Assembly (NCBI RefSeq): GCF_030144855.1
Contig: NC_082729.1
Span: 22,816,001-22,880,000, forward strand
From: Hypanus sabinus
Taxonomy: Eukaryota
Length of the DNA: 64,000 bases
Direction: 5' to 3'
Under the pieces are notes generated by a model. It saw only the letters and a list, made by a program, of their open reading frames with translations, was not told the origin of the DNA and did no database searches. This document shows positions 2,062 to 44,088 of the stretch, piece by piece. Every line of letters starts with the position of its first letter. Position 1 is the stretch's first letter. A program made the position numbers and the translations under genes.

Positions 2062-2988
2062 TCACAGCGAATTTGTTCGGCTGGGAGGGTCGTTCCTCAT
2101 TTCCGGCTCCTCCTCCGAGAAGGCCAGACGGAGAGAGGAGGCGAGGGAACGTCTGAAGACCTGGCGGAAATCGCGGCCGGTGAAGACGTAGAGAAAGGGG
2201 TTGAGAGCGCTGCTGAAGCAAGCCACGGCGGTAGCTACGTCATTCCAGATCAGAAACGAATAATTAAAAAAGAGCATTGCGAAACTGCAACTGTGGAGCG
2301 GGAGCCAGGACGCGATAAAGGCGGCGACCACGGTCATCATAAGGCGGACGGGCTTCTTGGACTTGACGAATTTGTCCCGGTGCAGCCTCCAGCCAATAAA
2401 CGCACAGCAAGCCGTCATGATCAGGACGGGGAACACGAAGATAAAGACAGCCCAAATGACCCTCATCATTTCCCAGGTCTTTTGATCAAAATCTGGTTCA
2501 AGCTTGATGTACAGCAGGGCTGTCATGCACAGGAGTATGGAGAAGCCGCAGACCCCGAGGAAGGTCACATGTGCCCAACGCAGACTATTGTGTTGATGGA
2601 ACCAAAGTGGCCGAGTGACGGCCAAGCAACGGAAGATGCTGATCAGCGTCAACATGAAAACGCTGACGGACCCGCTGAAGATGATGGAACCGAGCGGCAA
2701 CATGTACAGAATGTCATTTCGGAGCCAGGTGCCTCGTTGTGCAACGTTGGCCATCCAGAAGGGGAGGGTGAGGCAGTAGGTTAGGTCTGCCACAGCCAGG
2801 TACAAGAAACTCATTATGTGGATGTTCCGCTCCATCTTAAAGCCCGTCACCCAAATGACAGCGCTGTTGCCGGGAACGCCGAGCAGGAAGGTGATGGCGT
2901 AAGGGATCATGGTCCATTTGGAGACCGTCTGGAGATCGGGGCCGTTCCAAGCTGTGGTAAGGTTAAACAAATCCTTCTGGATCGACAT
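2062..2988 (-). CDS. Chemoattractant-type class A GPCR (C3aR/C5aR/CMKLR1/FPR-like), 308 aa, single coding exon, atypical motifs
   Basis: 7 hydrophobic segments; LLGVPGN, LAVAD, TLPF, ISIFRC, SWLP, NPFLYVF.GRDFR; N-glycosylation site NLT. First ATG at 2988 follows a pyrimidine tract and ACCAG|GACGAAA; the ORF-track start at 3099 is an intronic TTG. Confidence 0.93.
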   Translation of the reverse strand: MSIQKDLFNLTTAWNGPDLQTVSKWTMIPYAITFLLGVPGNSAVIWVTGFKMERNIHIMSFLYLAVADLTYCLTLPFWMANVAQRGTWLRNDILYMLPLGSIIFSGSVSVFMLTLISIFRCLAVTRPLWFHQHNSLRWAHVTFLGVCGFSILLCMTALLYIKLEPDFDQKTWEMMRVIWAVFIFVFPVLIMTACCAFIGWRLHRDKFVKSKKPVRLMMTVVAAFIASWLPLHSCSFAMLFFNYSFLIWNDVATAVACFSSALNPFLYVFTGRDFRQVFRRSLASSLRLAFSEEEPEMRNDPPSRTNSL

Positions 2989-3189
2989 TTTCGTCCTGGT
3001 GGTGAGGCTGAGAGGGTTGGGGAATTTGCGGATGGGGAGCGTGAGGGAAGAAGGAAAGATGGATAGATAGAGAGAAGGAGTGGATGAGTAAGAGGACAAA
3101 ATATTCTACGATCTCTCCTCAGCCCCGTCTCCCTCACAGCGCGACGCTCCCACATCACATTCCCTCCTAACATCCCTCTCCATAACCAT

Positions 3190-3930
3190 TTGGGCCGAAT
3201 GGCAGGAGGACGTATTGATAAGTTTCCAGCCAGTAGAACATTTTGTGTTGTGGACCGTGAAAAAGGCTGTATCGAATCGAGCATGATGTCTATCTGGGTA
3301 CAGGTTTGAGCAGAGAAACGTCAGCTGGAATTTAACCCGGAGAAGTGTGAGATGTTGCACGTTACCAGGGCAAATGTAAGGGGAACGCATGCAGGAAATT
3401 GTAAAAACTGATTTAGAGAGGGATCTCGGGTTCGGTGCTCCAAGGTCCGTAAAAGTACATACACAACAGATAGCGTGGTGAAGATGGCATATGTTATTCT
3501 TAAATTTCCTAACTTAACGCCTCGGACATTGAGTCCAGCGGTCTTGTCACAACAGTATGATGCATACACAAGGCTTTATTTGGGGTATTGTTTGCAGTTC
3601 TGGTCTCCCCATTACAGGAGTGAATCCAAGCATTCCAGACGGTGCAGAAGACATTCACCATGATTTGTACAGGATCCGATTAAAGGATCAGTTGGATATA
3701 TTCGTCTGGTTTTCTCTGGAGCTTAAGGGGCTGAGGATGGAGGCTTATTAAACGATGAGATGCACAAATAGGGAATGCAGAGAGTGACTTCGCCCAGCGC
3801 AGAATTTTGAAGGATGTCAATTGAAATTGTGCGGGGTAATGTTTATAGTAACTGTGCGGTGTAACGTTTAACATAAAAGCGGTGTGTACCTGGAACGGAC
3901 TGTTAGGGGAGGCGGTGGACGTAGCAGGTA
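3190..3930 (+). mobile_element. Decayed CR1 LINE 3' fragment inside the gene-1 intron
   Basis: ggaatttaacccggagaagtgtgag (FNPEKCE) and YCLQFWSPHYR motifs. Confidence 0.8.
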
Positions 3931-4217
3931 GGTTAGAATAAAATCAGACTCTCCAATTTGCAGACGGCCACAGCAGATGGCCGGTAAATCAATTTTGTCT
4001 TATCTGCAGAGGCAGCCTGGAGAGCAGAGAGATTCTTCATTTGCCTGAGTAAACCACCTTTAGTTCAAAGATCCCGTGCGCCCCTTTCCGACCCGTTCCC
4101 CAGTCTGTCACTCTATCTTCTACTGTGTCTTTTGTCCATGGTGCCCCATTCATGGCATTCTCCCCAGGACCCCTCCTCCTCACCTTTCACCCTGCTTTCC
4201 GTCGAGCTGCAGCTCAC

Positions 4218-4477
4218 CTTCCCCGGGGAGTCTCAGCCTCGATTAGCCACCGTGAACAGCTCGGACGGTCTGACTCAAATCTTAGACCACCAGAACTCGG
4301 CTTGAAGAGGAAATACACAGTGACGAACGCTGGGACAGTCCGCGGCTCCAGGTAGATCGTGAAACGGCGAAGTGTGCTGGAATTAAAGTCAGAAGCACTG
4401 AGTGGTGACTGACTTTCGTAAGTGGCTGAGATGTCGATCACGTAGGAATTCACAGATCATAGGAATGAAGACCAGTC
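4218..4477 (-). other. Predicted non-coding exon 1 of GPCR gene 1 (donor GT at 4217; intron 4217-2996)
   Basis: GGGGAAG|GTGAGCTG donor and about 50 nt of upstream sequence shared with the copies ending at 38213 and 53402; 5' end approximate. Confidence 0.75.
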
Positions 4478-4545
4478 TGCTCAATTTGAGGAAGTCAATT
4501 GAGCAAAAAGTTAGCAATAACCACAATTAATAAGGAACCTGCGAA
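4478..4545 (-). promoter_or_regulatory. Predicted myeloid-type promoter of gene 1 (PU.1/ETS, C/EBP-like and RUNX motifs)
   Basis: GAGGAAGT 4488-4495, ATTGAGCAA 4498-4506, AACCACA 4519-4525; the block acttcctcaaattgagc is homologous to the other promoter copies. Confidence 0.65.
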
Positions 4546-4556
4546 GTTTCTTTTAT

Positions 4557-7500
4557 TCATGTCCCTGACAACGACACCTGTAAGAAGTGCATCCAGCTGC
4601 AGCTTCTAACAAACCGCGTTCGGGAACTGGAGCAGGAGCTGGATGACCTCCGGATCATTCGGGAGAATGAGGTGTTTATAGATAGTAGTTACAGGGAGGC
4701 AGTTACCCCAAAGGAGCAGCACACAGATAATTGGGTTGCTGTCAGGCGAGGGAAGGGGAAAGGGCAGGCAGAGCAGGGTTCCCCTGTGGCCATTCTCCTC
4801 AACAACAGGTATATCGATTTGGATACTGTTGGGGGTGGGGGATGGCTTACCTGGGACAAGCTGCGGAAGCCGGATCTCTGGCACTGAGTCTGGTTCTGCA
4901 GTGCAGAAGGGCGGGGGAAGAAGATAAGAGTGGTCGTGTTAGAGGTACAGACAGGACGTTCTGTGGTTGCGACCGAGATTCCCGGAAGGTTTGTTGGCTC
5001 CCGGGTGCCAGGGTCAGGGATGTCTCTGATCGCGTGCACAGCATTCTGAAATGGGAGGGTGATCAGCCAGATGTCATGGTCCACATCGGTACCAATGATG
5101 TAGGAAGAAAGAGTGAGGAGATCCTGAAGAGCGAGTATAGAGAGCTTGGTAGGAAGTTAAAAAGCTGTACCTCAAGGGTGGTAATCTCAGGATTTCTACT
5201 TGTGCCACGTGCCAGTGAGGCTAAGAACAGAATGCGCTGGGGTGAACATGTGGCTGAGGAACTGGTGTAGGGGGCAGGGTTTCAGATTTCAGGATCATTG
5301 GGACCTTTCTGGGGCAGGAGGGACCAGTACAAGAGACACGAGTTATACCTGAACTACAGGGGGACCAATATCCTTGCAGGGAGGTTTGTTCGGGCTATTG
5401 GGGGAGGGGGATTTACAGGGAGATCGGAACCAGAGTGCCAGAGTAGATAGCGGAGCGGGGCTCTAAATAAATGACGTTAAAGTTTCATGCAAAGCCACAA
5501 ATACAAGAGTTGTGTGTGGTGGTATTAATCTTCTGAGGTACGTCTATTTCAATGCGAGGAGTATTGTAGGGAAGGTTGACGAGCTGAGGGCGTGGATTGA
5601 CAGGTGGAATTATGACATTGTAGCCATCAGTGAAACTTGGCTTCGGGAGGGGCAGGACTGGCAGCTTAATGTCCCAGGGTTCCGATGTTTCAGACGTGAT
5701 AGAGGCAGAGGAATGAAGGGTGGGGGTGGCATTGCTAGTCAGGGAAAATGTTACAGCAGTGCTCAGGCAGGACAGATTAGAGGGCTTGTCTACCGAGGCC
5801 ATATGGGTGGAGCTGAAAAACAGGAAAGGTATGACCACGATAATGGATTTGTATTATAGACCACCCAACAGTCAGCGAGAATTGGAGGAGCACATCTGAA
5901 GACAGATAGCAGACAACTGCAAGAAACATAAAGTTTTGTTAATAGGGGATTTTAATTTTCCACATACTGATTGGGACTCCGATACTTTTAAAGGTCTAGA
6001 CGGGTTAGAGTTTGTAAAATGTGTTCAGGAAGGTTTTTGAAATCATTATACAGAGGTACCAACTAGAGAGGATGCAATATTAGATCTCCTATTAGGAAAC
6101 GAGTTAGGACAGGTGATGGAAGTGTGTACAGAGGAACATTTTGGTTCCAGTGATCATAAGACTATTAGTTTCAACTTGATCATGGGTAAAGATAGATCTG
6201 GTCCTCGGGTTGAGGTTCTAAACTGGAAAAAGACCAGATTTGAAGAAATGAGAAAGGACTTAAAAGGCATGGATTGGGGCAGGTTGTTCTCTGGCAAGGA
6301 TGTCGTTGGTAAGTGGAAGGCCTTCAATGGAGAAATTTTGAGAGTGCAGAGTTTGTATGTTCCTGTCAGGATTAAAGGCAAAGTGAATAAGAACAAGGAA
6401 TCTTGTTTCTCGAGGGATATTGGAACGCTGATAAAGAAGAAGAGAGAGATGTATGACATGTATAGAAAACAGGGAGCAAATGAGGTACTTGAGGAGTACA
6501 AAATGTGCAAATTATCAGATAGTTTTACCATAGAGAAAGGCACGAGACAGGGTTGTACATGGTCACCGCTACTCCTTGCATTATATCTGGAACCATTAGC
6601 TCATTACATCAGACAAAATGAAGATATCAGGGGAATTACTATTAAAGGGACAGAGCATAAATTGGCTTGTTACGTGGATGGCATTTTGATCTATTGAGGG
6701 CAGCCAACATACCCTTTACCTAAATTGATACAATCCTTTGAGCAATATGGTCAGTTATCAGGATACAAGATCAACACCGATAAAATCCAATTACTTTCAT
6801 ATAACTTTTGCCCACCAAGAGAAATTGAAAGTAGATATCCCTGCGCATGGCAAATAGAGTCTTTCAAATATTTGGGCATTATTATGCCAAAAGATTTGGC
6901 AAGATTATCAGAATGCAATTATCAGCCTTTATATAAAAATTAAGGAAGATATGTCAAGACGGAACCTGATTCTGTTTTGTAGTCTCTGTTCAAGGTCTAT
7001 TAAAATGAATATACTGCCCAGACTGTTATATCTCTTTCAGACCCTACCAATAGAGATTAATCAACATCAATCCAATGAATGGAACAAGATGTTATCAAGG
7101 TATATTTGGGATGGTAAAAGGCCTAGAGTTTGTCTCAAAACTTTGCAATTAGCAAAGGAAACGGGGGGATGGGGCCTACCTTGTCTGAGAGGTTATTATT
7201 TTCCAGTCCACAGACATGGAAGGAGTTTGGATGCAAAAACGTGATAAGATATTTTATTACACACTGTCAGAAATCCCAATATGATAGCAACTTCCTTGTT
7301 TGCTGCAGAAATTGTGGAAATCAAAATCCAAATAATTATCATATTTTTTGGGACTGCCCTGTTATCAAAGACTATTGGAGGGGGATACACAATGCCTTAC
7401 AAGATATATTTAAATGTGAAATACCCTTAGAGAGTAAGACCATATATTTTGGATATATATCTCAAGAATGTTTGAAAAGAGATAAATATTTAATGAATTT

Positions 7501-9830
7501 ACTGTTGGTTGCTGGTAAAAAGACTCTTACTAGGAAATGGTTATCACAGGAGAGCCCAACTTTAAATGCATGGATGGCAATTACAATGGGCATTTACAAA
7601 ATGTAGAAGATAACAGCATCTGTTAATCATAAGCTGGAGCAATTTGATTCATACTGGGAAAAATGTTTTAACTACATAATGCCTCATAGGCCTGATTTTA
7701 TTCTCACAAATCAATGAATATGTTGTAAAAAAAAAAGCTCACTCACTACTTGAACATAGCTTTTTCCTTTTGATTCTTTTTTCTTTCCACTCTTTTCTTT
7801 AAGTGTATACCTCAGATAAATACTATGTGGAGATTTGTGATATATATGATTATATGATGTATATGTACAATGTCTGAAATACATCTTATGGAAATGTTTG
7901 TTTGATGATGAACTCCAATAAAAAATGAATTACAAAAAAAGAATGAAATCAGGGGGTCTAAAAAGAAGACATGAGGTAGCCTTGGCAGTCAACCTGAAGG
8001 ACAGGTATATTAATAGCAAAAGGATAGTAAGGGATAAAATCGATACTCTTGAAGATCAAAATGGTCGGCTATGTATGGAACCAAAAGAAATGGGGGAGAT
8101 CTTAAATGCTTTTGTTTGTTTTGTTTTTTTTTGCCTCTATATTTACTAGGAAAACTGACAGGCAGTCAATGGAAATAAGGCAAACAGGTAGTGAGGTCAT
8201 GGAACCTATACAGATTGAAGAGGAGGAGGTGCTTGCTGCCTTAAGGCAAATCAGAGCAGATAAATCCCCAGGACCTGACAGGGTACTCCTTCGGACCTTG
8301 AATGAGACTAATGTTGAAATTGCAGGGGCCCTGGCAGATATATTGAAAATGTCTGTATCTGCCGGCGAGGTGCTGGAGGATTGGAGGACAGCTCATGTTG
8401 TTCTGTTATTTATAAGGAGGCTCTAAAAGAAATCCAGGAAATTATAGGCCGGCAAGTTTGACGTCGGTAGTGGGTAAATTATTGGAAGGAGCACTAAGAG
8501 ATAGGATCTGCAAATATTTAGATAGACAGGGACTTTATGAGGGACAGTCAACACGGCTTTGACCTTGGTAGGTCATGTTTAACTAATCTATCAGTGTTTT
8601 TCGAGGAGGTTACAAGGAAAGTGGATGAAGGGAAGGCAGGAGGTGTTGTCTACATGGACTTCAGTAAGGCCCTTTGACAAGGTCCCGCATGGGAGATTAG
8701 TTAGGAAGATTCGGCTGCTAGGTATACATGGTGAGGTAGTAAATTACATTAGACATTGGCTCAATGGGAGAAACCAGAGAGTGGTAGTGCAGCATTGCTT
8801 CTCTGAGAGGAGGCCTGTGTCTAGTGGCGTGCCACAGGGATCAGTGTTAGGTCCATTGTTATTTGTCATCTATATCAATGATCTGGATGATCTTGTGGTA
8901 AATTGGATCTGCAAATTTGCTGACGATATAAAGATTGGAGGTATAGTGGGCAGTGAGGAAGGTTTTCAAAGCTTGCAGACGAATCTGGGCAGGTTGGAAA
9001 AATGGGCTGAAAATTGCAGATGGAGTTTAATACAGACAAGTGTGAGGTATTGCACTTTGGAAGGTAAAAAGCAAAGTAGAACATATAAGGTAAATGGTAG
9101 GGCACTGAGGAGTGCGGTAGAACAGAGGGATCTGGGAATACAGAAACAAAATTCCCTAAAAGTGGCGTCACAGGTAGATAGGGTAGTAAAGAGAGCTTTG
9201 GTACATTGGCCTTTATAAATCAAAGTATTGATTGTAAGAGTTGGAATGTTATGGTGAGGTTGTATAAGGCATTGGTGAGGCCGAATTTGGAGTATCGTGT
9301 GCAGTTTTGGTCACCGAATTACTGGAAGGGTATTAATAAAGTTGAAAGAGTGCAGAGAAGGTTGACAAGGATGTTTCTGGGACTTGAGAAACTGAGTTAC
9401 AGAGAAAGGTTGAATAGGTTAGGTCTTTATTCCCTGGAGCATAGAAGAATGAGGGGAGACTTGATAGAGGTATATAAAATTATGATGGGTATAGATAAAG
9501 TAAATGAAAGCAGGCTTTTTCCACTGAGGTCAAGGGAGAAATAAACCAGAGAACATGGGTTAAGGGTGAAGGGGGAAAAGAAAGGGCACATGGGGGGGGG
9601 GTCTTCTTCACACAGAGAATGGTGGGAGTGTGGAATGAGCTGCCAGACGAAATGGTAAATGCGGTCTCACTTTTAATATTTAAGGAAAGCTTAGACAGGG
9701 TCATGGATGAGAGGTGTATGGAGGGATATGGGCCAGAGGCAGGTCAGTGGGACGAGGCAGAAAAATGGTTCGGTGCAGCCAAGAAGGGCCAAAAGGCCTG
9801 TTTCTGTGCTGTCATGTTCTATGGTTCTAT
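4557..9830 (+). mobile_element. Near full-length decayed CR1 LINE (ORF1 Zn-finger/zipper/SGNH esterase; ORF2 APE and RT), interrupted by L1
   Basis: CKKCIQLQLL..RVRELE, LPGARVRDV, HIGTND, YFNARSI, ISETWL, GVPQGSVLGP, KFADD; tail ttctatggttctatg; many stops and frameshifts. Confidence 0.93.
6511..7940 (+). mobile_element. 5'-truncated, internally deleted L1/Tx1-clade LINE nested in the CR1
   Basis: [46 protein letters not shown]-terminal CRNCG...HIFWDCP knuckle; AATAAA and A-rich tail at 7917-7940; CR1 ORF2 resumes afterwards. Confidence 0.9.
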
Positions 9831-9844
9831 GAGAATGACCTTCT

Positions 9845-10705
9845 GTGTCTAAACATGTCCGTGTGTGCAGTGGACAATTTAGAGAGCTTCACTCTGCGTC
9901 AGACCCCGGGATTCTGCAATGGGGCTGTGTAAAGCAAGATGCAATCTGCGGTTAAACCTGGGCGGGTCTGATGGTAAGCTTTCCAGCAAGGCTCACTCTG
10001 TGTCTGACACCGGGAGTTTGTAATGGGACAATATAGAATGAGGTTCAGTCCGTGCCTGACTCTAGGAGTGATCGATAGGACGGAGTACAGGGAGCTTCAT
10101 TGTGCGACTGACACTGGGAAAGAACATCGGGGCAGTGTGAAGCTCTCTCTCTGCGTCTTGTTACGCCAGATGCAACGGCGTAGAGGGGGCTTCACAGTGT
10201 CTGGCCCCGGGAATCGTGGGATGAGGCGTTGCCGTGGAAGCTTCACTCTTGGTCTAACCCAGGGAACGTGTAATGGGACAATGTAATGGCAGAAGCTTCC
10301 TGGAAGTGTGCAATGGGACGGTGTAGAGGGNNNNNNNNNNNNNNNNNNNNNNNNNNNNNNNNNNNNNNNNNNNNNNNNNNNNNNNNNNNNNNNNNNNNNN
10401 NNNNNNNNNNNNNNNNNNNNNNNNNNNNNNNNNNNNNNNNNNNNNNNNNNNNNNNNNNNNNNNNNNNNNNNNNNNNNNNNNNNNNNNNNNNNNNNNNNNN
10501 NNNNNNNNNNNNNNNNAGAGAGCTGGGACAGTTAGGGAGGCAATTTTGCTCTGTGTCTGACTCTTATAGTGTGTGAGGGACAGGGTGGACGGAGCTACAC
10601 TCTGAGTCTGTCCCCTGCAGTGTCCGATGGACAGTGTGGGAGTAGCTTCACTCTGTGTCTGACCCTTACAGTATGTGATGGACAGTGAGGAGGGAGCTCC
10701 ATCCT
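9845..10705 (+). repeat. 52-bp satellite array (spans gap 10331-10516)
   Basis: Approximate unit gggagtgtgtgatgggacggtgtggagggagcttcactctgtgtctgacccc. Confidence 0.9.
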
Positions 10706-10949: not shown

Positions 10950-11230
10950 TCGCTCCTGGAATAAGTTGTGACCGGCGAAGACGTAGAAAAGAGGTTTGAT
11001 GACACTTTTGAAGCAGGCCACGCAGATGGTGACGTACTGCACGCCCAGTGGGTGCAATGGGTTTAAGGCCCAGACTAGGCCACAAAGAGTTTTGAAAACC
11101 CAGAAGACGTCAATGCTCAGTTTGTGGAGGTTGGTCAACAACACAAGGAGATAACATCTAACTCAGACAGCAAGGAACAGCAACCTGCTTCCTTTATTTT
11201 TGAGACGTGACAAAGGTAATAAGGGCCCTG
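10950..11230 (-). pseudogene. Internally deleted GPCR paralog 1: promoter remnant fused to TM6-TM7
   Basis: IDVFWVFKTLCGLVWA...VACFKSVIKPLFYVFAGHN starts at 11114; 11115-11230 aligns to the gene-2 promoter. Confidence 0.8.
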
Positions 11231-11239
11231 TGAGACAGT

Positions 11240-11531: not shown

Positions 11532-11534
<3 letters not shown>

Positions 11535-13769: not shown

Positions 13770-14095
13770 AGACAGTTCCCAATGCTAGATAGCGGCAAAG
13801 CGGCGGGACCTACCTAGCGAAGGTGTGGAAACAGACAGTTACCAACGCTAGGTAGCAGCAAACTGCCAGACTTAACCAGGAAAGGCGTGCACACAGACAG
13901 CTACCAACGCTAGGTAGCAGCAAACTGCCAGACCTAACCAGGAAAGGCATGCACACAGACAGTTGCCAACGCTAGGTAGCGGCAAACTGCCAGACATACC
14001 CAGGAAAGGCATACACACAGACAGTTACCAACGTTTGGAAGCGGCAAACGGCCGGACTTTCCTAGAGAAGGCGTGGACACAGACAGACTGTTCCT
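13770..14095. repeat. 62-bp tandem repeat, about 5 copies, inside the LTR
   Basis: ccaacg anchors at 13842, 13904, 13966 and 14028. Confidence 0.92.
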
Positions 14096-14099
14096 AACA

Positions 14100-14590
14100 G
14101 GGCGAGGCTCCAACCTGAGGCAAGGCGAGGCAAGACTACAGGTGTAGGCTAGGCGAGGCAGAGCTCTAGGCGGAGGCTAGGAGAGGCAAGTCTCCAGGCA
14201 GAAGCAGGGCGAGGCAAGGCTCCAACCGGAGGCAAGGCTCCTGGTGGATGCAAAGCGAGGCAAGGTTCTCGGCAGAGGCAGGGTGAGGCAAGGCTCCTGG
14301 TGGATGCAAAGCGAGGCAAGGCCCCAGTCAGAAGCGAGGCAGGGTAAGGCTCCTGGTGGAGGCTAGGAGAGGCAAGTCTCCAGGCAGAAGCAGGGCTAGG
14401 CAAGGCTCCAACCGGAGGCAAGGCTCTAGACGGATGCAAAGCGAGGCAAGGCCCCAGTCAGAGGCGAGGCAAGGCTCCAGGCAGAAGCAGGGTGAGGCGA
14501 GGCTCCAGGCCAAGGCAGGGCGAGGCAACGCTCCAGTCTGAAGCAAAGCGAGGCAAGGCTCCAGACGAGGCGAGGCGAAGCGAGACAAAG
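14100..14590. repeat. Short-period gcgaggcaaggctcc array with a 186-bp higher-order duplication
   Basis: ggaggctaggagaggcaagtctccaggcagaagcaggg at 14172 and 14358. Confidence 0.88.
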
Positions 14591-15049: not shown

Positions 15050-15390
15050 AGCTTTACTTTCCCTCTTCCTTCTTAAGACCAGATGGTGAGTCTTGACCAG
15101 AAAGTGCTTAACTACCTGGCGGAAGTTGTGGCGGGAGAAAATGGAGAGCAGGTGGTTAAGGACACTTTTGAAGGAGACCAACCTGTTGTGTCCTACTGCA
15201 CGCACAGTGGATGGGATGGTTAATGGCACAGACTAGGCCTCAAACAGTGATGCAAAGCCAGAACACGATAAAACTCAGTTTGAGGAAATTGGTCAGTAAC
15301 ACCAGGAGATTACATTGAACTCACACTGCGGAGAACAACAAAGTGTTGCGCTAATTTATCAGAAGTAACACAAGCAATGAAGTTCTGAGT
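15050..15390 (-). pseudogene. Internally deleted GPCR paralog 2: promoter fused to TM6-TM7, with stop and frameshift
   Basis: FIVFWLCITV*GLVCA starts at 15272, then frameshifts to LVSFKSVLNHLLSIFSRHNFRQV; 15273-15390 aligns well to the reverse complement of 37890-38002. Confidence 0.85.
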
Positions 15391-19819: not shown

Positions 19820-21095
19820 CTTTTCAATGACCATCTTATTTTCACTATGGATGTCCAATCCCTGTACATTTCCGACCCCCAGCAGGATGGCCTCAAAGCT
19901 CTCCGTTTCTCTGGACACTAGATCCGACCAGCTCCCCTCCACCACCACTCTCCTTCGTCTGGCGGAACTCGTCCTCACTCTTAACAATTTCTCAGTCGGC
20001 TCCTCCCCTATCCTTCAAATAAGAGGTGTATCTGTCCGCAGTTGCATGGATCCCAGCTATGGCTGCTTGTTTGTCCACTACGTGGGAGAATCTATATTCC
20101 AAGACTACATTGGTATCACACCCAACTTTTCCTACACTACATCGATGACTGCATTGGTGTAACTTCCTGCACCCATGCAGAAATCGTCTGCCATCGTAAC
20201 CTCCTCCCACCACCCCACCAGGAATAGCGTTCCTCTTGCCCTCACCTACCATGCCACCTGCCTCGGCGTCCAGCACATAATTCTCCATAACTTCCACCGA
20301 GGTCCGCCATCAAGCTCAATCTTTCCTTCTCCCCCACTTTCTGCTTTCCGCAAGGAACGCTCCCTAAGCGATTCCCTTCTCCATTTTTCCCTCCCCAGTG
20401 ACTTTCCACCTCCTCCCTCACTACTATTCAGGGCTCTAAACAGCCCTTACAAGAGAGGGGACGCTTCACCTGTGAGTCCTTTCAGATCATCTACTGTATC
20501 CGCTGCTCTGGTGAGAGCTTCGCTGAGGACCTACGCTCCACCCGCCAAAAAGCAGAACCTTCTAGTGACCACCCATTTTAATTCCAGTTCCAATTCCCAT
20601 TCCCACATGGTAGACCATGGCATTCTCTACTCTCGTGGTGAGGACACACACAGACTGGAGAAGCAACACTGTCTATTCCATCTGGGTAGCCTTCAGCCTG
20701 GTTATATGAACAACGATTTCTCGAACTTCCGGCAATGCCTCCCCTCCTCCATTTCCATTCCGCATTCCCCCTCTCATCTTATCTCCTTACCTGGCCTAGC
20801 ACCTCCCACTGGCATTCCTCCAACTTGTCTTTCTTCCATGGCTTTCTGTTACTTTCTATCAGATTCCCCCTTACCTTCTCCGGTCCAGCCCTGTATGTCT
20901 TTCACCTATCAACTTCCCAGTTCCTTACTTCACCTCTCCTCTCTGCAGGTTTCACCTACACCTCGCCTCCCCACCTCCACTTTCTTACTCTGACCCTTCA
21001 GTCCTGGTTAAGGAGCTTGGCCCGAAATGCCGACTGTACACTTTTCCAAGATGCTGCCTGGCCTGCCGAGTTCCTCAGCATTTTGTGTGTGTTGC
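19820..21095 (+). mobile_element. Decayed Penelope-like retroelement (RT and GIY-YIG remnants, pyrimidine tract, hammerhead tail)
   Basis: FTMDVQSLY, LAELVLTLNNFS, MDPSYGCLFV, YIDDCIG, VPLALTYH, THFNSSS. Confidence 0.85.
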
Positions 21096-35599: not shown

Positions 35600-36280
35600 G
35601 AAGTAATCACGTTAATAAATCGTGGGGCTTCAGGAATATTGACGAGCAGGGACCTCGGTGCACAAGAGTAGGACACACACCATGTATGGTGGGGAATCTT
35701 GTGGAGCAGCGGGACTTTGGTGTACAAGAGTTAGAAACACGCCGTAAATGGTGTGGAAAGTTGCAGAGCACAGGGACCATTGTGTACAAGTGTAGGATGC
35801 ACACCATATATGGTTGGGATTACTGAGGAACAGAGAGACCTCGGTGTTCAAAGATAGGGCACACACCTTGCATAGTACGTAGTATTGAGGAACATGGGGC
35901 CTCACTGTAGAATGGTGGTATCCCACAATGAATGGTATGGAGTGTTGAGGGGCAGAGGATCGCGGTGTACAAGGGTAGGACACACGGCATGAATGGTGGG
36001 GAGTGTTGAGAATCAGAGGGACCTCGGCGAACAAGAGTAGGATACGCACTGTGAATGGCGGGGCGTCGTGAGAAACATAGGAACATCAGCGCACAGCGAT
36101 AGCATTCACACAATGAATAGTATTGAGTGTTAAGGGATAGAGGAAGTAAGGGTATGACATGCATCATGAACGAGGGGGAATATTGAGAATCAGTGGGATC
36201 TCGGTATACAACAGCAGGGCACGCGCCGTGAATGATGGTGACTATTGAGGGACAGAAGCACCCATGTGTAGAAGTCCAGT
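35600..36280 (+). repeat. About 61-62-bp minisatellite, about 11 copies, derived from CR1 ORF2
   Basis: gggacctcggtg-type anchors near 35649, 35711, 35773, 35835 and onward; CR1 sequence continues to about 36800. Confidence 0.85.
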
Positions 36281-37595: not shown

Positions 37596-37769
37596 TAGAT
37601 GATAAACAGCAATTGTCCCAGCCCCAATCCTTGTGTCACACCAGTTGTTACTGGCTTGCAACCAAATGAACAGCAATCTGCTTTCACTCTCTGTATCCTC
37701 CACGAACTCGAAGTCCATTCGAATTGGCCACTTCATCCTTAATGCCAAGCAAATTAACCCTTCTTGGAT

Positions 37770-37890
37770 CTGTATTCCCCTGTTCGACACAGAGGGAAGC
37801 TCCTTCCACATTGTACCATTACCCATCTCAGGGTAAGAAACAGACTGAAGCTCCTCCACAAGGTCATATGTTCACGGGTTAGGCACAAAG
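37770..37890 (-). repeat. About 2 units of the 52-bp satellite immediately upstream of promoter 2
   Basis: gacacagagggaagctccttccacattgtaccattac. Confidence 0.75.
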
Positions 37891-38002
37891 CTTCATTGTC
37901 TCTGTTACTTCTCGGATATAAAGTAAATATTTGTTGTTCTCTGCAGAGTGAGTTCAGCGTTATCTCCTGGTGTCATCGATCTAACTTCCTCAGACTGAGC
38001 TG
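37890..38002 (+). promoter_or_regulatory. Predicted promoter of GPCR gene 2 (PU.1/ETS core)
   Basis: ACTTCCTC 37984-37991 within tctcctggtgtcatcgatctaacttcctcagactgagctg, a block shared with the other copies. Confidence 0.65.
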
Positions 38003-38213
38003 CTTCCAGCTTTGAATCTTCGGGGTGTACTCCGAAGGTGGACTGAGCCATCTCCCAATCTTTAATCTGGACATCTCCTGCACCAGCATCATCATACCTC
38101 CTGGATCTGCATAGTTCTTCTTCAAGACTGGGTCCTCGTGGAAAATTTGGGATCTGAGTCCAACTGTTCCGATCTGGCCAGGAGGTCGGTCTGAGCTGGA
38201 GATTCTGGGGAAG
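38003..38213 (+). other. Predicted non-coding exon 1 of gene 2 (donor GT at 38214; intron 38214-43142)
   Basis: gagattctGGGGAAG|GTGAGCTG; an in-frame upstream TGA indicates it is UTR; 5' end approximate. Confidence 0.75.
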
Positions 38214-38279
38214 GTGAGCTGGATCTCGATGGAGAGCAGGGTTCGTGATTAATGTTCATTTGGAAAGGCAGTATTTGAT

Positions 38280-38870
38280 CTGTGAGAGTCAGGGTGGCTT
38301 TGTGTGGGGGACATGTGCCACATTAATTTTCGGAGGTATTTTGAGGGGTGTACTTTAGAAGGCGGAATGTCAGGATAATTGATATTGTCCGGCTTGGGCT
38401 TTAACGAGGCACCAATAAATTTGTATCGACCTGACCCTTATGGTAGGCTAGCCCAGAAGGTTAAATCACATGGGATGAAAGGTGAATTGGTAAACTGGAT
38501 CCGAACTTGGTTTAGTGGAAAGAGACAGGAGGTGGTGCAGGAAATGTGATTTCGTATTTGGAAGTCGGTGACCTGTGGCGGGTCGTATTGTCGGTGGTGA
38601 CATCGCTGCTGCTTGGGGTTCACATTAACAATAGATGGAATATGGCGGTACGATCAGAGAGTCTGTGGATGACAGGAAAGCTGGTGACGTTGAGGACAGA
38701 AAGGAAGTGGATCTAGGGCAACAGTAGGCGATGGATCAGTTGGCAGCTGGTTTTCCATCCAGTTAATCACGTGTTGATGCATCTTAGGAAGTCAAACCGG
38801 TATTGCTCATCCACATTATGTGGTAGGTTGCAAAGGAATGTAGATAAACAGAAGGGGCTAGAATGTAAAT
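38280..38870 (+). mobile_element. Decayed CR1 RT fragment
   Basis: gtaaactggatccgaacttggtttagtggaaagagacaggaggtggtg. Confidence 0.7.
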
Positions 38871-38988
38871 AAACAGAAATCCAGTGTCAGAGGGTAATAC
38901 GTCATAGAAACAGGAACTTCCGCTAAAGCTGTTCCATGCCGAGAGAGTTTCTCATCTAAGCCATTCTCATAAATCATATTTCTCTAAC

Positions 38989-39068
38989 CAGGGGTTCCTT
39001 ACCTTATTTATGCCGTGGACCCCTACCATTAACGGGAAGGTTCGTGGATCCCAGATTGGAAGACCCTG
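38989..39068. mobile_element. 80-bp hAT-like MITE
   Basis: TIR-like CAGGGGTTCC...GGAAGACCCTG with internal gtggaccc/gtggatccc; TSD not convincing. Confidence 0.55.
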
Positions 39069-40130
39069 TCCCGATACTTTCCTACACATATATCTGTCCA
39101 AGTAACTTGACAACCGATGTGGACGTATCTACCTCTAATACCAGGCACAATATGTAAATACGGCCTCAACAATTTCTTTACTGCTCCAACTTCTGTATTC
39201 AGTGCCCTGTCGGATAAGGGCCAGCGAACCCAACGCTGCCTTCACCGCCCTGCCGACCTGACACGTCACTTTCAGGGAACCACGTACAGAAACTGCGTAT
39301 CAAGAATAGCTACCACCAATCTCTCATGAACCTTTTGATAGCTTGCTCAAAGAATTCCAGCCATGTGGCAGCTCTGGGAGATGATTTCACGTAAATACCT
39401 TAGCTTGTGTAAGGAAAATTTGCCTCCTCAATGTCCTCTCAACTCTGCCCCCTCGTCTTCAACCTGTGCATGCTGGTTCTTGATTCCCCAACCCTGTGAA
39501 AAAGACTGCATATAATCTACGAGTGCAGGCCCCTCGTGATTATAAACACGTCTAAAATATCAGCTCTCAGTCTCCCACACTCCTGGGAATAAAGTCCAAG
39601 CATGACCAACCTCTTTCTGTGCCAAAAATCCTGGAAGCGTCCTTGTAAATATTCTTGTCCAGTTTAATAATATCCTTCTTATAGCTGGATGACTAAAACT
39701 GAACAAAGCATGCCTCACCAACGTCTCGTACAACCACACGATGACTCACTAACTCTACAATTAGTGTCCTGCCTGATGATGATCTTCATCGTCATCTTGT
39801 CTACCTGTGTCGCCACTTTCAGGAAACCATGAGCCTCTACGCCCTCTCTTCGACAACATTCTCCGGAACACCACAATTGGCAAATAGTGTTTAATTCGGT
39901 CAACTGTGAGGTGATGTAATTTGGGAGTCAAATCGGGAGGGGAGGTATACAGTCAATGGTGGGCTGCTGAAGAATGCTGATGAACATAGAGATCAAGGGT
40001 TTCAAGTCCATGATTCCTTGGAAGTAGAAGCACAGCTTGACAGATTGGAGAAGAAGGAGTATGGCATGCTCGCTCTCCTACGTCGGGCACAGTATAAACG
40101 TAAGAGATGTTATCAAAACTCTATGAGATG

Positions 40131-40420
40131 GGGCGGGGCGGTAGAGATGTAGTTAGCATAGTTAGCAGAACACTTTACAGTACCAGCAACCTAGGTTCAA
40201 TTCTGGTGGCCTCCTGTAAGGAGTGTGTACGTTCTCCCCGATACCGCAAGGGTTTCCTCAGGGTGCTCCTGTTTCCTCCCACAATCCAAAGACATACCAA
40301 ATGGTTCATTAATTCAGTGTTCTAAATGTTCCTGTGATTCAGCTAGGATTAATTCGAACCGATATATGAGCAGCGTGGCTCAAAAGGCATGAAAGGTCTG
40401 TTGCACGCTGCAGATAGATT
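40131..40420 (+). mobile_element. tRNA-derived SINE
   Basis: A-box-like tagcatagttag, B-box-like ggttcaattc, core gtacgttctcccc...gggtttcctc; related copies at 45645-45935 (+) and 51450-51650 (-). Confidence 0.7.
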
Positions 40421-40489
40421 GATTAGATCAATTCGATACAGCAGATACGGCGGTGGAGAAGGCGTACGGTTGCTTTCTTTACTCAGAAC

Positions 40490-42790
40490 AGAGAAAATGT
40501 GGGGAGCAAATACAATACTCAAAGTGATATATCTCAGTTCACGGAGTATAAGAAATGAGGTGGATGATCGTGTTGCACGATTACAGATTGTCGGGTATGA
40601 TGTGGCCATCACTGAATCGTGGCTGAAGGATGGTTGTAGCTGGGAGCTGAATGTACAAAGGTAAACATTGTATCGGATTGATAGGAAGGTAATCAGAAGG
40701 GAGCCGTGGCTCTGCTGGTAAAAGTGGCATCAAATCTGTAGAAAGATGTGATATAGGACCGGAAGGTGTTGCATCCTTGTGGGTTGAGTTAAGAAACTGC
40801 AAGGGTAAAAGGACCCAGATGGCAGTGATATACAGGCCACCCAAATCTAGCAAGGATATGGACCAAAGGTTACAATGGGAAATGGAGATGACGTGTCAAA
40901 GGCGTAATGTTACGATAGTCATGGGATATTGCTACATGGAGGACGATTGGGAAATCAGGTTGATAATGAATCTCAAGAGAGTGAGTTCGTTGAATGCCTG
41001 CGAGATGACTTTTAGAGCAGGTTGGCGTTGTGCCTACTGGGGGACCAACTATACTGGATTTGGTGTTATGTAATGTACTGGGGGTAATTACGGAGCACCG
41101 GGTAAAAGAACCCTTAGGAGGCAGTGGTCACCAAAAAAAAGTGAGTTCAACTTGAAATCTGATAGGGAGAAAGTAAAGCCTGACATAACAATATTTCAGC
41201 GGCGTAAGGGAAACTACAGTGGTATGAGAGAGGAGATGGCCAAAGTAAATTGGAAGGAGCCACTGGCAGGGATGGCATGACTTTCTGGGAAGAAAATGAG
41301 GAATGTGCAAGATAGATGTATTCCAAACACACAAAAAAAAACTCAAATGTCAAAGTAGTACAACCGTGGCTGACAAGGGAAGTCAAAGCAGATGTTAAAG
41401 CAAAACGGGGGTAAACAACAAAGCAACAATTAATGGGAAGAGAGAGGATTGGAAAGGTTTTAAAAACTTACAGAAAACTGAAAGAATCATTAGGAGCGAA
41501 ATATGAACTATTCAAGCATACTACAAAGAATATCAATATGGATAGTAAAAGCTTTTTCAAGTATGTTAAAAGATATAAAAGAGATCGGAGTGGATATAGA
41601 ACCGCTTAGAAAATAAGACCAGAGAAATCATAACGAGGGACAAAGAGATAGCAGATAAGTTAAATGAATATTTTGCACCAGCCATCACTGTGGAAGACAG
41701 TAACCGCGTGTCAGATGTTAAAGGGTGTGAGAGAAGAGAAGTGAGTGCATTTACTATTATAAAACAAAAGGTGCTCAAAAAGTTGAAAGACCTAAAGGTA
41801 CATGAGTCACCCGGACCAGGTGAACTGCACTCTAGGATTCTGAATGAGGTAGCGGTAGAAATTTTGGAGGCATTAGTTATGATCTTTCAAAAATAACTGG
41901 ACTCTGGCATGGTGCCAGAAGACTGGAAATCGCAAATGTTACTCCACTCTTTAAGAAAGGAGGAAGGCAGCAGAAAGGGAATTATAGACTAGTTGGCCTG
42001 ACCTCAGTGGTTGGGAAGATGTTGGATTTAAGTGTTAAGGATGACGTTATGGAGTACTTGTAACACAAGACAAAATAAGGTAACGTCAACATGGTTTCCT
42101 TAAGGGAAAATCTTGTCTGAAGAACTTGTAGGAATTCTTTGAGGAGATTACAAGTAGGATGGATAAAGGAGGTGTAGTAGATGTTATATATTTCGACTTT
42201 CATAAGGCCTTTGACAAGGTGCGATATATGAAGCTGCTTACCAAGTTAAATGCCCTTGTTATTACAGGAAAGGTATTGGCATGGTTAGAGCATTGGTTGA
42301 TAGGTAAGAGGCAGGGAGTGAGAATAAAATTATTTCTAGTTAGCTGCAAGTGACTAGAGATGTTCGTAGGGGTCGGCATTTATACCGCTTCTTTTTATGC
42401 AGAGCATCAATGATTTAGATTATGGACCGGATGATTTTGTTGCCAAGTTTGCAGATGATACGAAAATTGGTGAAGGGGCAGGTAGTGTTGAGGAAACAGG
42501 TAGGTTGCAGAAGGACTTCAAAAGATTAGTAAAACGTCTTAAAGTGGAAAATGAAATCCAGCATTGGAAAATACAGGGTCATGCACTTTGGTCACAGAAA
42601 TGAATATGCAGACCATTTTCTAAACAGACAAAAATCCAAACATCTCAGATGCAGAAGGACATAGTGTTATCATAAGTTTGATGTGTCTAGGTCTGTACTC
42701 GCTGGAATTTAAAAGAATGGTGGGGGATCTCAATGAAACCTTTCGAATGTTGGATAATCTATCTAGCGTGGAGAGGGTGCAGAGAAGATT
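40490..42790 (+). mobile_element. Decayed CR1 ORF2 (APE and RT) within the gene-2 intron
   Basis: YLSSRSIRNEVD, AITESWL, IYRPP, DFHKAFDKV, KFADDTK. Confidence 0.9.
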
Positions 42791-43149
42791 TTGGGTCCGG
42801 GGGGAAAGTGGTGTGAGGAATGATGGAGTGCCGCACTGTTGGAAATCCGGTGCGGGAGCGTTCCACTGTTGGGAAGACGGTGAGGATGCGCCACATTTTG
42901 GGGGGTGGAGGAGCACAACGGTGTAGGTAAGGCGGTGAGGAAGCACAGCGTTTGAAGCCCGATTGCTTTGTCATCAAACTCTTCCTCCTTCTTCCTTCCG
43001 TTCCTTCCTTCGTCACCTCTCCAACCTCTGTATCGCTTTTCACATCTACCCTCTCTCCTGCTTAGCTCTTGTCGCTCTCTCACACGTCACCCTTAAATTC
43101 TATTCCTCACATCTCTCACCTCAATAATATCTCCCATACCAGGTCCATT

Positions 43150-44088
43150 ATGTCACGCTCCGCGGACCTGTTCAACTCCACTCTCGGTGGGAATGGCTCT
43201 TTCAACAGTGTCATGCCTAAGGACTTCGAGTTAGCACCCGCCACCTTATCCACGGTTTCTTTCGTTATCACCTTCCTGCTGGGCGTCCCCGGAAACTGCG
43301 CAGTCATCTGGGTAACAGGCTTCAAGATGGAGAGAAGAGCCCACACGGTGTGTTTCCTGAAACTGGCTGTGGCGGACCTGGCGTACTGCTTTACCCTTCC
43401 TTTCCATTTAGCCATGTTTTTCGATCTAAGTTCATTTCCCCAAGATGACTCCTTCTTCATATTCTTCGGCTGCGTCGTCATCATCAACATGTCCGTCAGC
43501 TCCTTCCTGTTGACTCTAATCAGTATCTTCCGCAGCCTGGCCGTCATTCGGCCCATTTGGTTCCGGCATCAGCTGAGCCTGGATTTGGTATATGTGTCCT
43601 GCTTCGGAGCCTGGGTCCTGGCCTTCCTCATGTCCCTGCCTCACCTGATATTTGAGCAGATTATCCTATATTTTGGGGAGAATACCTGGCTCTTTCTGGA
43701 GGTAACTTGGGATGTCTTCATCTTCGGCCTCACAATTCTAATCATGTCAACCTGCTATATCATGATCGGCCGGATTCTGCAGATGGATGATTTAGCCAAA
43801 TCCCAGAAGCCCGTCCGCCTCATAGTGACCGTGGTCGTCGCCTTCATCATCTGCTGGCTTCCCAATATTGTCTGCAGCCTTCTTCGTGACATCTCTGATG
43901 CCTTTCTCAATGGCTGGCTGACCCTTACCTTTGCTCTGGCCTCCTTCAACAGCGCCCTTAACTCCCTTCTCTACGTCTTCCCCGGCCGTGATTTCCGCCG
44001 GGTCTTCAGGCGCTCCCTGACGGCCTCGCTCCACCTGGCTTTCGCCGAGGAAGTTCTTCCCCACCCCGCAGTCACCGTGGACAGATAG
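43150..44088 (+). CDS. Chemoattractant-type class A GPCR paralog, 312 aa, single coding exon, atypical motifs
   Basis: LLGVPGN, LAVAD, ISIFRS, CWLP, NSLLYVF.GRDFR; N-glycosylation sites NST and NGS; ATG follows a pyrimidine tract and ACCAG|GTCCATT; open frame but P5.50T and P7.50S. Confidence 0.9.
   Translation: MSRSADLFNSTLGGNGSFNSVMPKDFELAPATLSTVSFVITFLLGVPGNCAVIWVTGFKMERRAHTVCFLKLAVADLAYCFTLPFHLAMFFDLSSFPQDDSFFIFFGCVVIINMSVSSFLLTLISIFRSLAVIRPIWFRHQLSLDLVYVSCFGAWVLAFLMSLPHLIFEQIILYFGENTWLFLEVTWDVFIFGLTILIMSTCYIMIGRILQMDDLAKSQKPVRLIVTVVVAFIICWLPNIVCSLLRDISDAFLNGWLTLTFALASFNSALNSLLYVFPGRDFRRVFRRSLTASLHLAFAEEVLPHPAVTVDR

What the first reader, a model, noticed from the sequence alone, without database searches (positions are those of the whole stretch)
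2062..44088. Atypical chemoattractant-receptor subfamily: FR(C/S) instead of DRY, no TM3-ECL2 disulfide, tiny ECL2, no anaphylatoxin contacts
Seen in both intact paralogs, counting from R3.50, 5.50 and 7.50: 3.49=F; 3.25=Y/F; no Cys in an ECL2 of roughly 15 aa; 5.42=W; 7.35=N/L; short N-termini without Tyr. Established: C3aR/C5aR/FPR/CMKLR1 carry DR(C/F) and the Cys3.25-ECL2 bond, C3aR has a very long ECL2, C5aR1 uses R5.42 and D7.35 for the ligand C-terminus, and loss of the 3.49 acid often raises basal activity. Inference: automated pipelines would call these C3aR-like, but they are probably not complement receptors. Because two diverged copies share the changes, these look like family features rather than decay. 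The open pocket parallels MRGPRs and suggests an uncharacterised lineage-specific sensor family.
Basis: partly seen in the sequence, partly recalled or inferred. Interest (0 to 1): 0.85.

Follow-up and report, generated by a model that had tools for sequence, protein, structure and literature searches.

The report
Ray-specific remodelled chemoattractant-receptor gene family
The two genes belong to a large, fast-diversifying receptor family found only in rays and sawfish; it descends from complement-peptide receptors but has lost their ligand contacts, extracellular lid and disulfide, so it most likely senses unknown ligands, and one of the two copies here seems to be decaying.

Summary
Gene A (2065-2988, minus strand) and gene B (43150-44085, plus strand) are single-exon class A GPCRs, 47% identical. 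Both have F at 3.49, no Cys3.25, no Cys in the TM4-TM5 link, W5.42 and N or L at 7.35. None of the N gaps touches either coding sequence.

These are family traits. I recovered 70 full-length paralogs from five batoids (Hypanus, Hemitrygon, two Mobula, Pristis). None has D/E at 3.49, and they form one clade (100/100). That clade is nested among canonical chondrichthyan "C3aR-like" genes, which keep C3.25, DRC, the ECL2 Cys and the R5.42/Y6.51/D7.35 triad that binds the anaphylatoxin C-terminal arginine. Sharks and a chimaera gave only canonical genes.

Within the derived family, variability sits in the extracellular half (2.05 vs 1.00 bits). Pairwise dN/dS among sawfish paralogs is about 1. The window also holds three decayed relics, so this looks like birth-and-death evolution. 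A confident model joins TM4 and TM5 by a two-residue turn.

Correction: B's T5.50, S7.50 and S3.51 are private to this genome. Its orthologs in two of four related organisms are broken, and pN/pS is about 0.9, so B is probably decaying. Gene A has an ortholog and looks maintained.

Expression and ligands remain unknown. I found no paper on this family.

The parts
2065..2988 (-). Gene A: single-exon CDS, 308 aa (stop at 2062-2064). Derived-family receptor with Y3.25, FRC, W5.42, L6.51, N7.35; also C4.50, C5.58, S6.47, S7.45.
   Evidence: ORF; Pfam 7tm_1, 1.6e-25; best PDB hit is C3aR, 1e-44. Ortholog P0002 in Hemitrygon is 73% identical, and the A subclade of 5 is supported 100/99. The N-terminus and its sequon are conserved in paralogs, so the 308-aa start is preferred over the annotated 282-aa model P0001.
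43150..44085 (+). Gene B: single-exon CDS, 312 aa (stop at 44086-44088). Derived-family receptor with F3.25, FRS, W5.42, N6.51, L7.35, plus private T5.50 and S7.50. Probably under relaxed constraint.
   Evidence: ORF; Pfam 3.3e-29; identical to P0037. It sits on a lone long branch of 0.63. Relatives carry P5.50, P7.50 and C3.51; one has a premature stop and one a 2-bp deletion; 28 nonsynonymous and 10 synonymous differences were listed.
10959..11108 (-). Relic of a family member (TM6-TM7 piece only).
   Evidence: Family HMM positions 237-286, i-E 1.6e-7; tblastn hit. The sequenced flank upstream shows no further homology, so the truncation is not caused by the gap at 10331-10516.
15062..15184 (-). 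Second relic (TM7-helix 8 piece).
   Evidence: Family HMM positions 265-305, i-E 7.4e-6.
49683..49874 (+). Third relic (TM6 to helix 8), with an in-frame stop and a degenerate NPxxY.
   Evidence: Family HMM positions 234-297, i-E 1.4e-13; translation shows the CWLP motif followed by a stop.

Best explanation
A and B belong to a tandemly arrayed, birth-and-death GPCR subfamily that arose once in batoids by duplication of a canonical chondrichthyan anaphylatoxin-receptor-like gene.

Shown:
- The founder lost the acid at 3.49, the Cys3.25-ECL2 disulfide, essentially the whole ECL2 hairpin, and the R5.42/Y6.51/D7.35 triad.
- The family kept N1.50, D2.50, R3.50, CWxP and NPxxY.
- Since then the extracellular half of the helix bundle has diversified strongly between paralogs.

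Inferred:
- The receptors no longer bind C3a or C5a.
- They still couple to G proteins through R3.50, Y5.58 and NPxxY. Without the 3.49 acid their basal activity is probably raised.
- Each paralog senses a different ligand, still unknown, through a lidless open pocket. The role could be chemosensory or innate-immune.
- Gene A, whose subclade has additionally replaced W4.50 and Y5.58, is maintained by selection. Gene B is an open but decaying copy.
For: Clade and distribution:
- 70 derived paralogs form one clade (100/100), nested in a chondrichthyan clade (100/93) beside canonical batoid genes.
- The AU test rejects holding all sawfish genes together (delta lnL 150, p 5e-7), so the origin is single and predates the sawfish-stingray split.
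- Derived genes turned up only in five batoids. Canonical genes turned up in eight sharks and a chimaera.

Residue states:
- 3.49 is C/Y/F/V/S/L and never D/E. R3.50 is present in 69 of 70, Y5.58 in 64, W6.48 in 67, and N7.49 and Y7.53 in all 70.
- The triad is R18 / Y17 F1 / D18 in the 18 canonical genes. In the derived family it is W50 at 5.42 and mixed at 6.51 and 7.35.

Variability and selection:
- Entropy is 2.05 bits in the extracellular half against 1.00 in the intracellular half (p 1e-18). Canonical genes show no such asymmetry (0.78 vs 0.65, p 0.25). The most variable sites are pocket positions 7.32, 7.35, 3.25-3.33, 6.55-6.59 and 4.60-4.64.
- NG86 dN/dS among sawfish paralogs is 0.8-1.26 (extracellular half up to 1.8), against 0.51 for a canonical pair.
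- Open frames at these divergences are unlikely under neutrality: P about 0.01-0.09.

Genome layout and structure:
- In sawfish the derived genes form a tandem cluster at 3.06-3.17 Mb, with a canonical gene at 3.21 Mb on the same scaffold.
- The window holds three relics.
- The model has no ECL2.

Literature:
- The triad is essential for C3a and C5a recognition.
- V3.49 is linked to constitutive activity in ORF74 and CXCR2.
- MrgD combines Q3.49, loss of the disulfide and high basal activity.
Against: - No expression evidence exists. No RNA run held either gene.
- No ligand or signalling data exist.
- dN/dS near 1 cannot on its own separate diversifying selection from relaxed constraint, and only annotated (hence intact) genes were sampled.
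- Gene A lacks Y5.58, W4.50 and N7.45, which may impair classical G-protein activation.
- Gene B looks neutral.
- The effect of losing D3.49 varies between receptors; the review read gives examples in both directions.
- No skate protein appeared in any search list, so the age of the family within batoids is not bounded on that side.
Confidence: 0.7

Rival explanations
1. The family consists of atypical, non-G-protein receptors (scavenger, decoy or arrestin-biased), like C5aR2 or the atypical chemokine receptors, whose hallmark is a damaged DRY motif.
For: D3.49 is absent in every member. The C-tails after helix 8 are short. The A subclade has also lost Y5.58 and W4.50.
Against: R3.50, the residue lost in C5aR2 (DLC, from my own knowledge), is kept in 69 of 70. 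Y5.58 is kept in 64 of 70, and NPxxY and CWxP are almost invariant. The intracellular halves are the most conserved parts (TM1i 0.33, TM7i 0.49, TM2i 0.62 bits), which fits a conserved transducer interface. A decoy role also does not explain the extreme diversification of the pocket.
Confidence: 0.12
2. The unusual residues reflect decay: the genes are young, open but functionless duplicates drifting toward pseudogenes.
For: B has private losses of P5.50, P7.50 and C3.51. Its orthologs are broken in two of four related organisms, and pN/pS is about 0.9. An open frame is expected about 60% of the time at that divergence. The window holds three relics. Sawfish paralogs show dN/dS near 1.
Against: This fits B only. 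The shared traits are fixed across 70 paralogs in lineages that separate sawfish from stingrays, and the activation core is conserved. A has an ortholog in Hemitrygon, and its subclade keeps its special residues in three genera. Intracellular dN/dS is about 0.4 in distant comparisons. Long-term open frames are improbable under neutrality.
Confidence: 0.1
3. They are still complement anaphylatoxin receptors that recognise ray C3a, C4a or C5a through a different binding mode.
For: The closest solved relatives by sequence and fold are C3aR, FPR, CMKLR1 and C5aR1. Automated names say C3aR-like.
Against: The conserved triad and ECL2 contact sites are gone. Each ray genome keeps two to five canonical genes with the full triad that can serve as anaphylatoxin receptors. 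Dozens of paralogs with hypervariable pockets do not fit two or three conserved ligands.
Confidence: 0.05

Closest known systems
Canonical chondrichthyan 'C3aR-like' receptors (e.g. P0057, P0020, P0013; shark P0052; chimaera P0112), co-orthologs of bony-vertebrate C3aR/C5aR1
   Same: They are the direct ancestors or sisters of the family: 40-52% identity to A, the same chromosome, and in sawfish a position next to the derived cluster. They share the TM1-TM2 and helix 8 sequence signatures.
   Different: Canonical genes keep C3.25, DRC, an ECL2 with Cys (4.50-to-5.50 distance of 56), and R5.42/Y6.51/D7.35. They evolve several-fold more slowly and occur in sharks and a chimaera.
Human C3aR, C5aR1, FPR1/2, CMKLR1 (solved structures)
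   Same: They are the best sequence hits (1e-44 to 1e-28) and the best Foldseek hits (TM 0.68-0.78).
   Different: All have the DRC/DRF/DRY acid, the TM3-ECL2 disulfide and an ECL2 hairpin. C3aR has an ECL2 of about 172 aa. The anaphylatoxin triad is absent in the ray family.
MRGPR family (e.g. MrgD, MRGPRX2)
   Same: The analogy covers a lineage-specific expanded family, loss of C3.25/C45.50, an exposed pocket, Q3.49 in MrgD and high basal activity.
   Different: They are not related at subfamily level: 1e-17 by sequence, and absent from the top 50 structural hits. MRGPRs have a C4.64-C5.33 disulfide and lack W6.48. The ray family has no Cys at 4.64 or 5.33 and keeps W6.48.
KSHV ORF74 (VRY motif)
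   Same: It carries a hydrophobic residue at 3.49 with R3.50 kept, inside a chemoattractant-type receptor. This is linked to constitutive signalling, and D3.49V in CXCR2 reproduces the effect.
   Different: ORF74 is a viral chemokine-receptor homolog with a normal disulfide and ECL2, and it is a single gene rather than a multigene family.
Vomeronasal FPR-rs genes of rodents (from my own knowledge) and a frog FPR-rs-like gene (P0163)
   Same: Immune chemoattractant receptors were duplicated and repurposed. The frog representative also lacks C3.25 and has a short link (named).
   Different: These keep DRC. The ray family's loss of the 3.49 acid together with the ECL2 loss is unique among about 140 neighbouring clusters.

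Membership tests
Class A (rhodopsin-like) GPCR | Match to the 7tm_1 profile and seven helices | tested here: met
   Pfam E 1.6e-25 and 3.3e-29. AF2 model with seven TM helices plus helix 8, pLDDT 86.7.
Class A (rhodopsin-like) GPCR | Activation microswitches N1.50, D2.50, R3.50, W4.50, P5.50, Y5.58, CWxP, NPxxY | tested here: inconclusive
   The family as a whole keeps them. A lacks W4.50, Y5.58 and N7.45. B lacks P5.50 and P7.50.
Anaphylatoxin receptors C3aR/C5aR1 | 1:1 orthology to C3AR1 or C5AR1 | tested here: not met
   They are in-paralogs inside a chondrichthyan-only clade that is sister to bony-vertebrate C3aR plus C5aR1.
Anaphylatoxin receptors C3aR/C5aR1 | R5.42 / Y6.51 / D7.35 pocket for the ligand's C-terminal Arg | tested here: not met
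   A has W/L/N and B has W/N/L. The triad is invariant in the 18 canonical chondrichthyan genes.
Anaphylatoxin receptors C3aR/C5aR1 | ECL2 hairpin tied to TM3 by the Cys3.25-Cys45.50 disulfide (very long ECL2 in C3aR) | tested here: not met
   Neither Cys is present. The 4.50-to-5.50 distance is 40 residues, and the model shows a two-residue turn.
Anaphylatoxin receptors C3aR/C5aR1 | Activation by C3a or C5a | not testable with these tools
   Needs cell assays with species-matched peptides.
MRGPR | Clade membership by sequence or fold | tested here: not met
   MRGPRE and MRGPRD score 1e-17 against 1e-44 for C3aR. No MRGPR appears in the top 50 Foldseek hits.
MRGPR | TM4-TM5 disulfide C4.64-C5.33 replacing the canonical one | tested here: not met
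   4.64 is R/E/Q/P and 5.33 is K/E/N. No conserved extracellular Cys pair exists.
Atypical/decoy chemoattractant receptors (C5aR2, ACKRs) | Loss of R3.50 or a disabled G-protein interface | tested here: not met
   R3.50 is present in 69 of 70 members and in both A and B. The intracellular halves are the most conserved regions.
Birth-and-death multigene sensor-type receptor family (the OR, TAAR, MRGPR, VNO-FPR pattern) | Lineage-specific tandem expansion with pseudogene relics | tested here: met
   7-23 full-length derived genes per species, all on one chromosome or scaffold. The sawfish cluster has spacing of roughly 7-40 kb. The window holds three relics.
Birth-and-death multigene sensor-type receptor family | Variability and elevated dN/dS concentrated in the ligand pocket | tested here: met
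   Entropy 2.05 vs 1.00 bits, p 1e-18. dN/dS in the extracellular half reaches 1.8, against 0.58 for the canonical pair. This is pairwise NG86 only; no site model was run.
Birth-and-death multigene sensor-type receptor family | Expression in sensory or immune sentinel cells | not testable with these tools
   No RNA run was listed.

The most novel reading that the evidence does not exclude
The family is a previously unrecognised chemosensory receptor repertoire of rays and sawfish. On this reading it is expressed in olfactory, oral, gill or skin sensory cells, one or a few genes per cell. It would have evolved from immune anaphylatoxin receptors in the same way that rodent vomeronasal FPRs evolved from immune FPRs, and it would supplement the very small OR and TAAR repertoires of cartilaginous fishes.
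Probability: 0.25. Interest if true: 0.85.

Novelty: new variant of a known kind. Interest (0 to 1): 0.6.

Why it matters
Annotation currently files dozens of ray genes per genome as complement C3a or formyl-peptide receptors. That would mislead any comparative study of complement or innate immunity in cartilaginous fishes.

The family is also a natural experiment. A peptide-receptor scaffold has lived for a very long time without the 3.49 acid, without the class A disulfide and without an ECL2, while keeping its G-protein core. That bears on how basal activity and pocket access are tuned in GPCRs.

If the genes prove to be expressed in sensory tissue, they would be a new vertebrate chemoreceptor family, in a group whose olfactory receptor repertoire is notably small. 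If they are expressed in leukocytes, they would be a diversified innate sensor array.

Tried and rejected
- RNA evidence. Two run searches listed no RNA holder. The four runs that were listed are DNA of related organisms. They were useful for B's orthologs but not for expression.
- Ortholog DNA. Hypanus and Hemitrygon DNA for dN/dS could not be fetched because the files were too large. I used sawfish loci instead.
- First AF2 run. With the shallow 52-sequence alignment it gave pLDDT 65 and I discarded it. The 140-sequence run is the one used.
- MRGPR membership: rejected.
- Independent, convergent origin of the derived state in sawfish. I considered this because synonymous distances within sawfish are low. 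The AU test rejected it.
- The relic near the 10331-10516 gap being a gene cut by the gap. Rejected, because its missing part would lie on the sequenced side.
- Literature. Seven searches and one targeted paper check found nothing on this family.
- Skates. No skate protein appeared in any list. This is not evidence of absence.
Full report
**What is in the window.** Two long ORFs encode class A GPCRs. Gene A is 2065-2988 on the minus strand (308 aa from the first Met). Gene B is 43150-44085 on the plus strand (312 aa). Both match Pfam 7tm_1 and are 47% identical to each other. All five N runs lie outside both coding sequences, so the gap caveat does not affect the reading frames. I filled none of them. 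A's Met-1 start is supported by a conserved N-terminus and glycosylation sequon in paralogs. The database model for this gene (P0001, 282 aa) starts 26 residues later. The window's own proteins share a 38.76-Mb contig with proteins named for Hypanus sabinus, so the genome is a stingray.

**Observation check.** HMMER alignments to human C3aR, the best solved relative (1e-44), place F opposite D3.49 and Y (A) or F (B) opposite Cys3.25. The whole C3aR ECL2 is unmatched. FPR1/2, CMKLR1 and C5aR1 come next, and MRGPRs score only 1e-17. Counting from anchor residues gives the following:
- 3.49-3.51: FRC in A, FRS in B.
- 5.42: W in both.
- 6.51: L in A, N in B.
- 7.35: N in A, L in B.
- No Cys between TM4 and TM5.
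- 40 residues from 4.50 to 5.50.

The N-termini have no Tyr.

**Family context.** A word-indexed search, an exhaustive HMMER search of 1.84 billion cluster representatives, and two profile searches recovered the relatives. Two kinds of chondrichthyan gene appear, all auto-named C3aR-like or FPR-like.
- Canonical genes (about 345 aa) have C3.25, DRC, one Cys in an ECL2 of ordinary length (4.50-to-5.50 distance of 56), R5.42, Y6.51 and D7.35. They occur in five batoids, eight sharks and Callorhinchus.
- Derived genes (about 300-330 aa) never have D/E at 3.49; they have C, Y, F, V, S or L instead. They mostly lack C3.25, and they lack the conserved ECL2 Cys. Their TM4-TM5 link is shortened (23-40), they mostly have W5.42, and 6.51 and 7.35 vary.

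Derived genes were found only in Hypanus sabinus, Hemitrygon akajei, Mobula birostris, M. hypostoma and Pristis pectinata. The counts are at least 19, 23, 8, 7 and 12 full-length genes respectively, all on a single chromosome or scaffold per species. Among about 140 other representative clusters across vertebrates, nearly all keep C3.25 and D/E3.49. A few have lost C3.25 but kept the acid, among them a frog FPR-rs-like gene.

**Phylogeny.** I built an IQ-TREE (LG+C20 PMSF) tree of 104 sequences on 320 profile columns, which exclude the ECL2 insert. It places all 70 derived genes in one clade with 100/100 support. That clade is nested in a chondrichthyan-only clade (100/93). Its nearest relatives are canonical batoid genes, followed by sharks and then the chimaera. 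The chondrichthyan clade is sister to bony-vertebrate C3aR plus C5aR1, with CMKLR1 and FPR as outgroup. So A and B are not C3AR1 orthologs.

Synonymous distances between sawfish canonical and derived genes were oddly low, so I tested a sawfish-only origin. Holding all sawfish genes together costs 150 log-likelihood units (p-AU 5e-7). The derived state therefore arose once, before sawfish and stingrays split and after the split from sharks. No skate protein appeared in any list, so skates are untested.

**Signs of function and diversification.**
- Within the derived family the activation core is conserved: N1.50 in 69 of 70, D2.50 in 69, R3.50 in 69, P5.50 in 67, Y5.58 in 64, W6.48 in 67, and P6.50, N7.49 and Y7.53 in all 70.
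- Variability is concentrated in the extracellular half of the bundle and the loops: mean entropy 2.05 bits against 1.00 on the intracellular side (Mann-Whitney p 1e-18). The canonical clade shows no such asymmetry (0.78 vs 0.65, p 0.25).
- The most variable positions are 7.32, 7.35, 3.25, 3.26, 3.29, 3.30, 3.33, 6.55, 6.58, 6.59, 4.60 and 4.64. Several of these are invariant in canonical genes.
- I cut coding sequences from sawfish loci. Pairwise Nei-Gojobori dN/dS among six derived paralogs is 0.8-1.26. It reaches 1.8 in the extracellular half and is 0.6-1.3 in the intracellular half.
- A canonical pair gives 0.51 overall (0.58 and 0.26 for the two halves). Distant derived comparisons give about 0.9 extracellular against 0.4 intracellular.
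- These pairwise values cannot prove positive selection. However, open frames at such divergences are improbable under neutrality: P is about 0.09 at 0.1 substitutions per site and 0.01 at 0.2.
- In sawfish the derived genes lie roughly 7-40 kb apart at 3.06-3.17 Mb, with a canonical gene at 3.21 Mb on the same scaffold.
- The window also contains three decayed family relics, at 10959-11108, 15062-15184 and 49683-49874. The last one has a stop codon.

Together this is the pattern of a birth-and-death receptor family.

**Structure.** With a 140-sequence alignment, AlphaFold2 gives a confident model of A (pLDDT 86.7, pTM 0.85). TM4 (136-166) and TM5 (169-205) are joined by two non-helical residues, so there is no ECL2 hairpin or lid. 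The best structural matches are FPR2, C3aR, FPR1, CMKLR1 and C5aR1 (TM 0.68-0.78). No MRGPR is in the top 50.

**The two genes are not equivalent.**

Gene A has a Hemitrygon ortholog (73% identity). It sits in a five-gene subclade (100/99) from three genera that shares C or S at 4.50 and C at 5.58, so these oddities are conserved rather than random. The few differences listed in related organisms split 5 nonsynonymous to 4 synonymous, which gives a pN/pS of about 0.4 on a small and incomplete sample.

Gene B is a lone long branch with no ortholog among annotated proteins. DNA contigs of four related organisms (about 96% identical) cover it:
- All four have Pro at codon 195 (5.50), Pro at codon 272 (7.50) and Cys at codon 129 (3.51). 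The T, S and S in this window are therefore private changes.
- One relative has W180 changed to a stop codon, and another has a 2-bp deletion at 43707.
- The listed differences are 28 nonsynonymous to 10 synonymous (pN/pS about 0.9).

At that divergence a neutral ORF stays open about 60% of the time. That matches three open copies out of five. B is most likely a recently released, decaying copy. The contigs are of low depth (6-13x), so resequencing is needed to confirm this.

**Mechanism.**

Shown: the loss of the acid at 3.49, of the disulfide, of ECL2 and of the triad; retention of R3.50 and the other switches; pocket-focused diversification; tandem birth-and-death dynamics.

From the literature:
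- R5.42, Y6.51 and D7.35 hold the C-terminal Arg of C3a and C5a, and ECL2 supplies further contacts (10.1101/2023.01.18.524551).
- A hydrophobic 3.49 accompanies constitutive signalling in ORF74, and D3.49V transfers it to CXCR2, although effects differ between receptors (PMC3414077).
- MrgD lacks C3.25/C45.50, has Q3.49, an exposed shallow pocket and high basal activity (PMC9287403).

Inferred: the derived receptors no longer bind anaphylatoxins; the canonical paralogs can do that job. They still couple to G proteins, probably with raised basal tone, and each senses a different unknown ligand through an open pocket.

Rivals, with my odds: atypical non-G-protein receptors (0.12), general decay (0.1, though likely for B alone), and still complement receptors (0.05).

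**Comparison and novelty.** The family works somewhat like MRGPRs or vomeronasal FPRs but belongs to neither group. It is a derived branch of the C3aR/C5aR lineage. Seven literature searches and one targeted paper check found no description of it. I rate it a new variant of a known kind.

Earlier first-stage notes on this genome flag a separate expanded orphan family (GPR139-like clusters) as a possible chemosensory repertoire. That is context only; I did not test it.

**Limits.** There are no expression data. Gene counts are lower bounds. dN/dS is pairwise only and based on annotated genes. B's ortholog lesions rest on low-depth contigs. Skates are unsampled.

Noticed in passing
window 6113-6697 and 8625-9218 (+): ORF fragments matching reverse transcriptase (RVT_1, E 5e-6 and 2e-13). 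This is retrotransposon debris between gene A and the first relic.
   Followed up: partly
window 48629-49485: Minisatellite of a 52-bp unit, 16.7 copies at 66% match, directly upstream of the third receptor relic. Other arrays lie at 13770-14562 (units of 56, 62 and 124 bp) and 35633-36095 (62 bp).
   Followed up: no
window 44086 (stop codon of gene B): In three of four related organisms the first base of B's stop codon is C (TAG to CAG), so the reading frame would run on past this point there.
   Followed up: partly
P0163 (Mixophyes fleayi) and P0191 (Hymenochirus boettgeri), found: Two frog proteins from the same homology neighbourhood have independently lost Cys3.25 but keep DRC. P0163 is named FPR-related sequence 1-like and also has a short TM4-TM5 link. 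P0191 is unnamed and has an ordinary-length link. This may be a parallel remodelling in anurans.
   Followed up: no
L005 1-3021 (Pristis CM019897.1, beside canonical P0013): A called gene with a 922-aa product and no Pfam hit lies about 7 kb from the canonical receptor. I did not examine it.
   Followed up: no
Hypanus 131,755-bp contig carrying P0008: A caspase-domain gene (Peptidase_C14) lies about 8 kb from a derived-family paralog on an unplaced contig.
   Followed up: no
window 20175-20993 (+): A 272-aa Ser/Pro-rich low-complexity ORF with no Pfam match. It is probably not a gene.
   Followed up: partly
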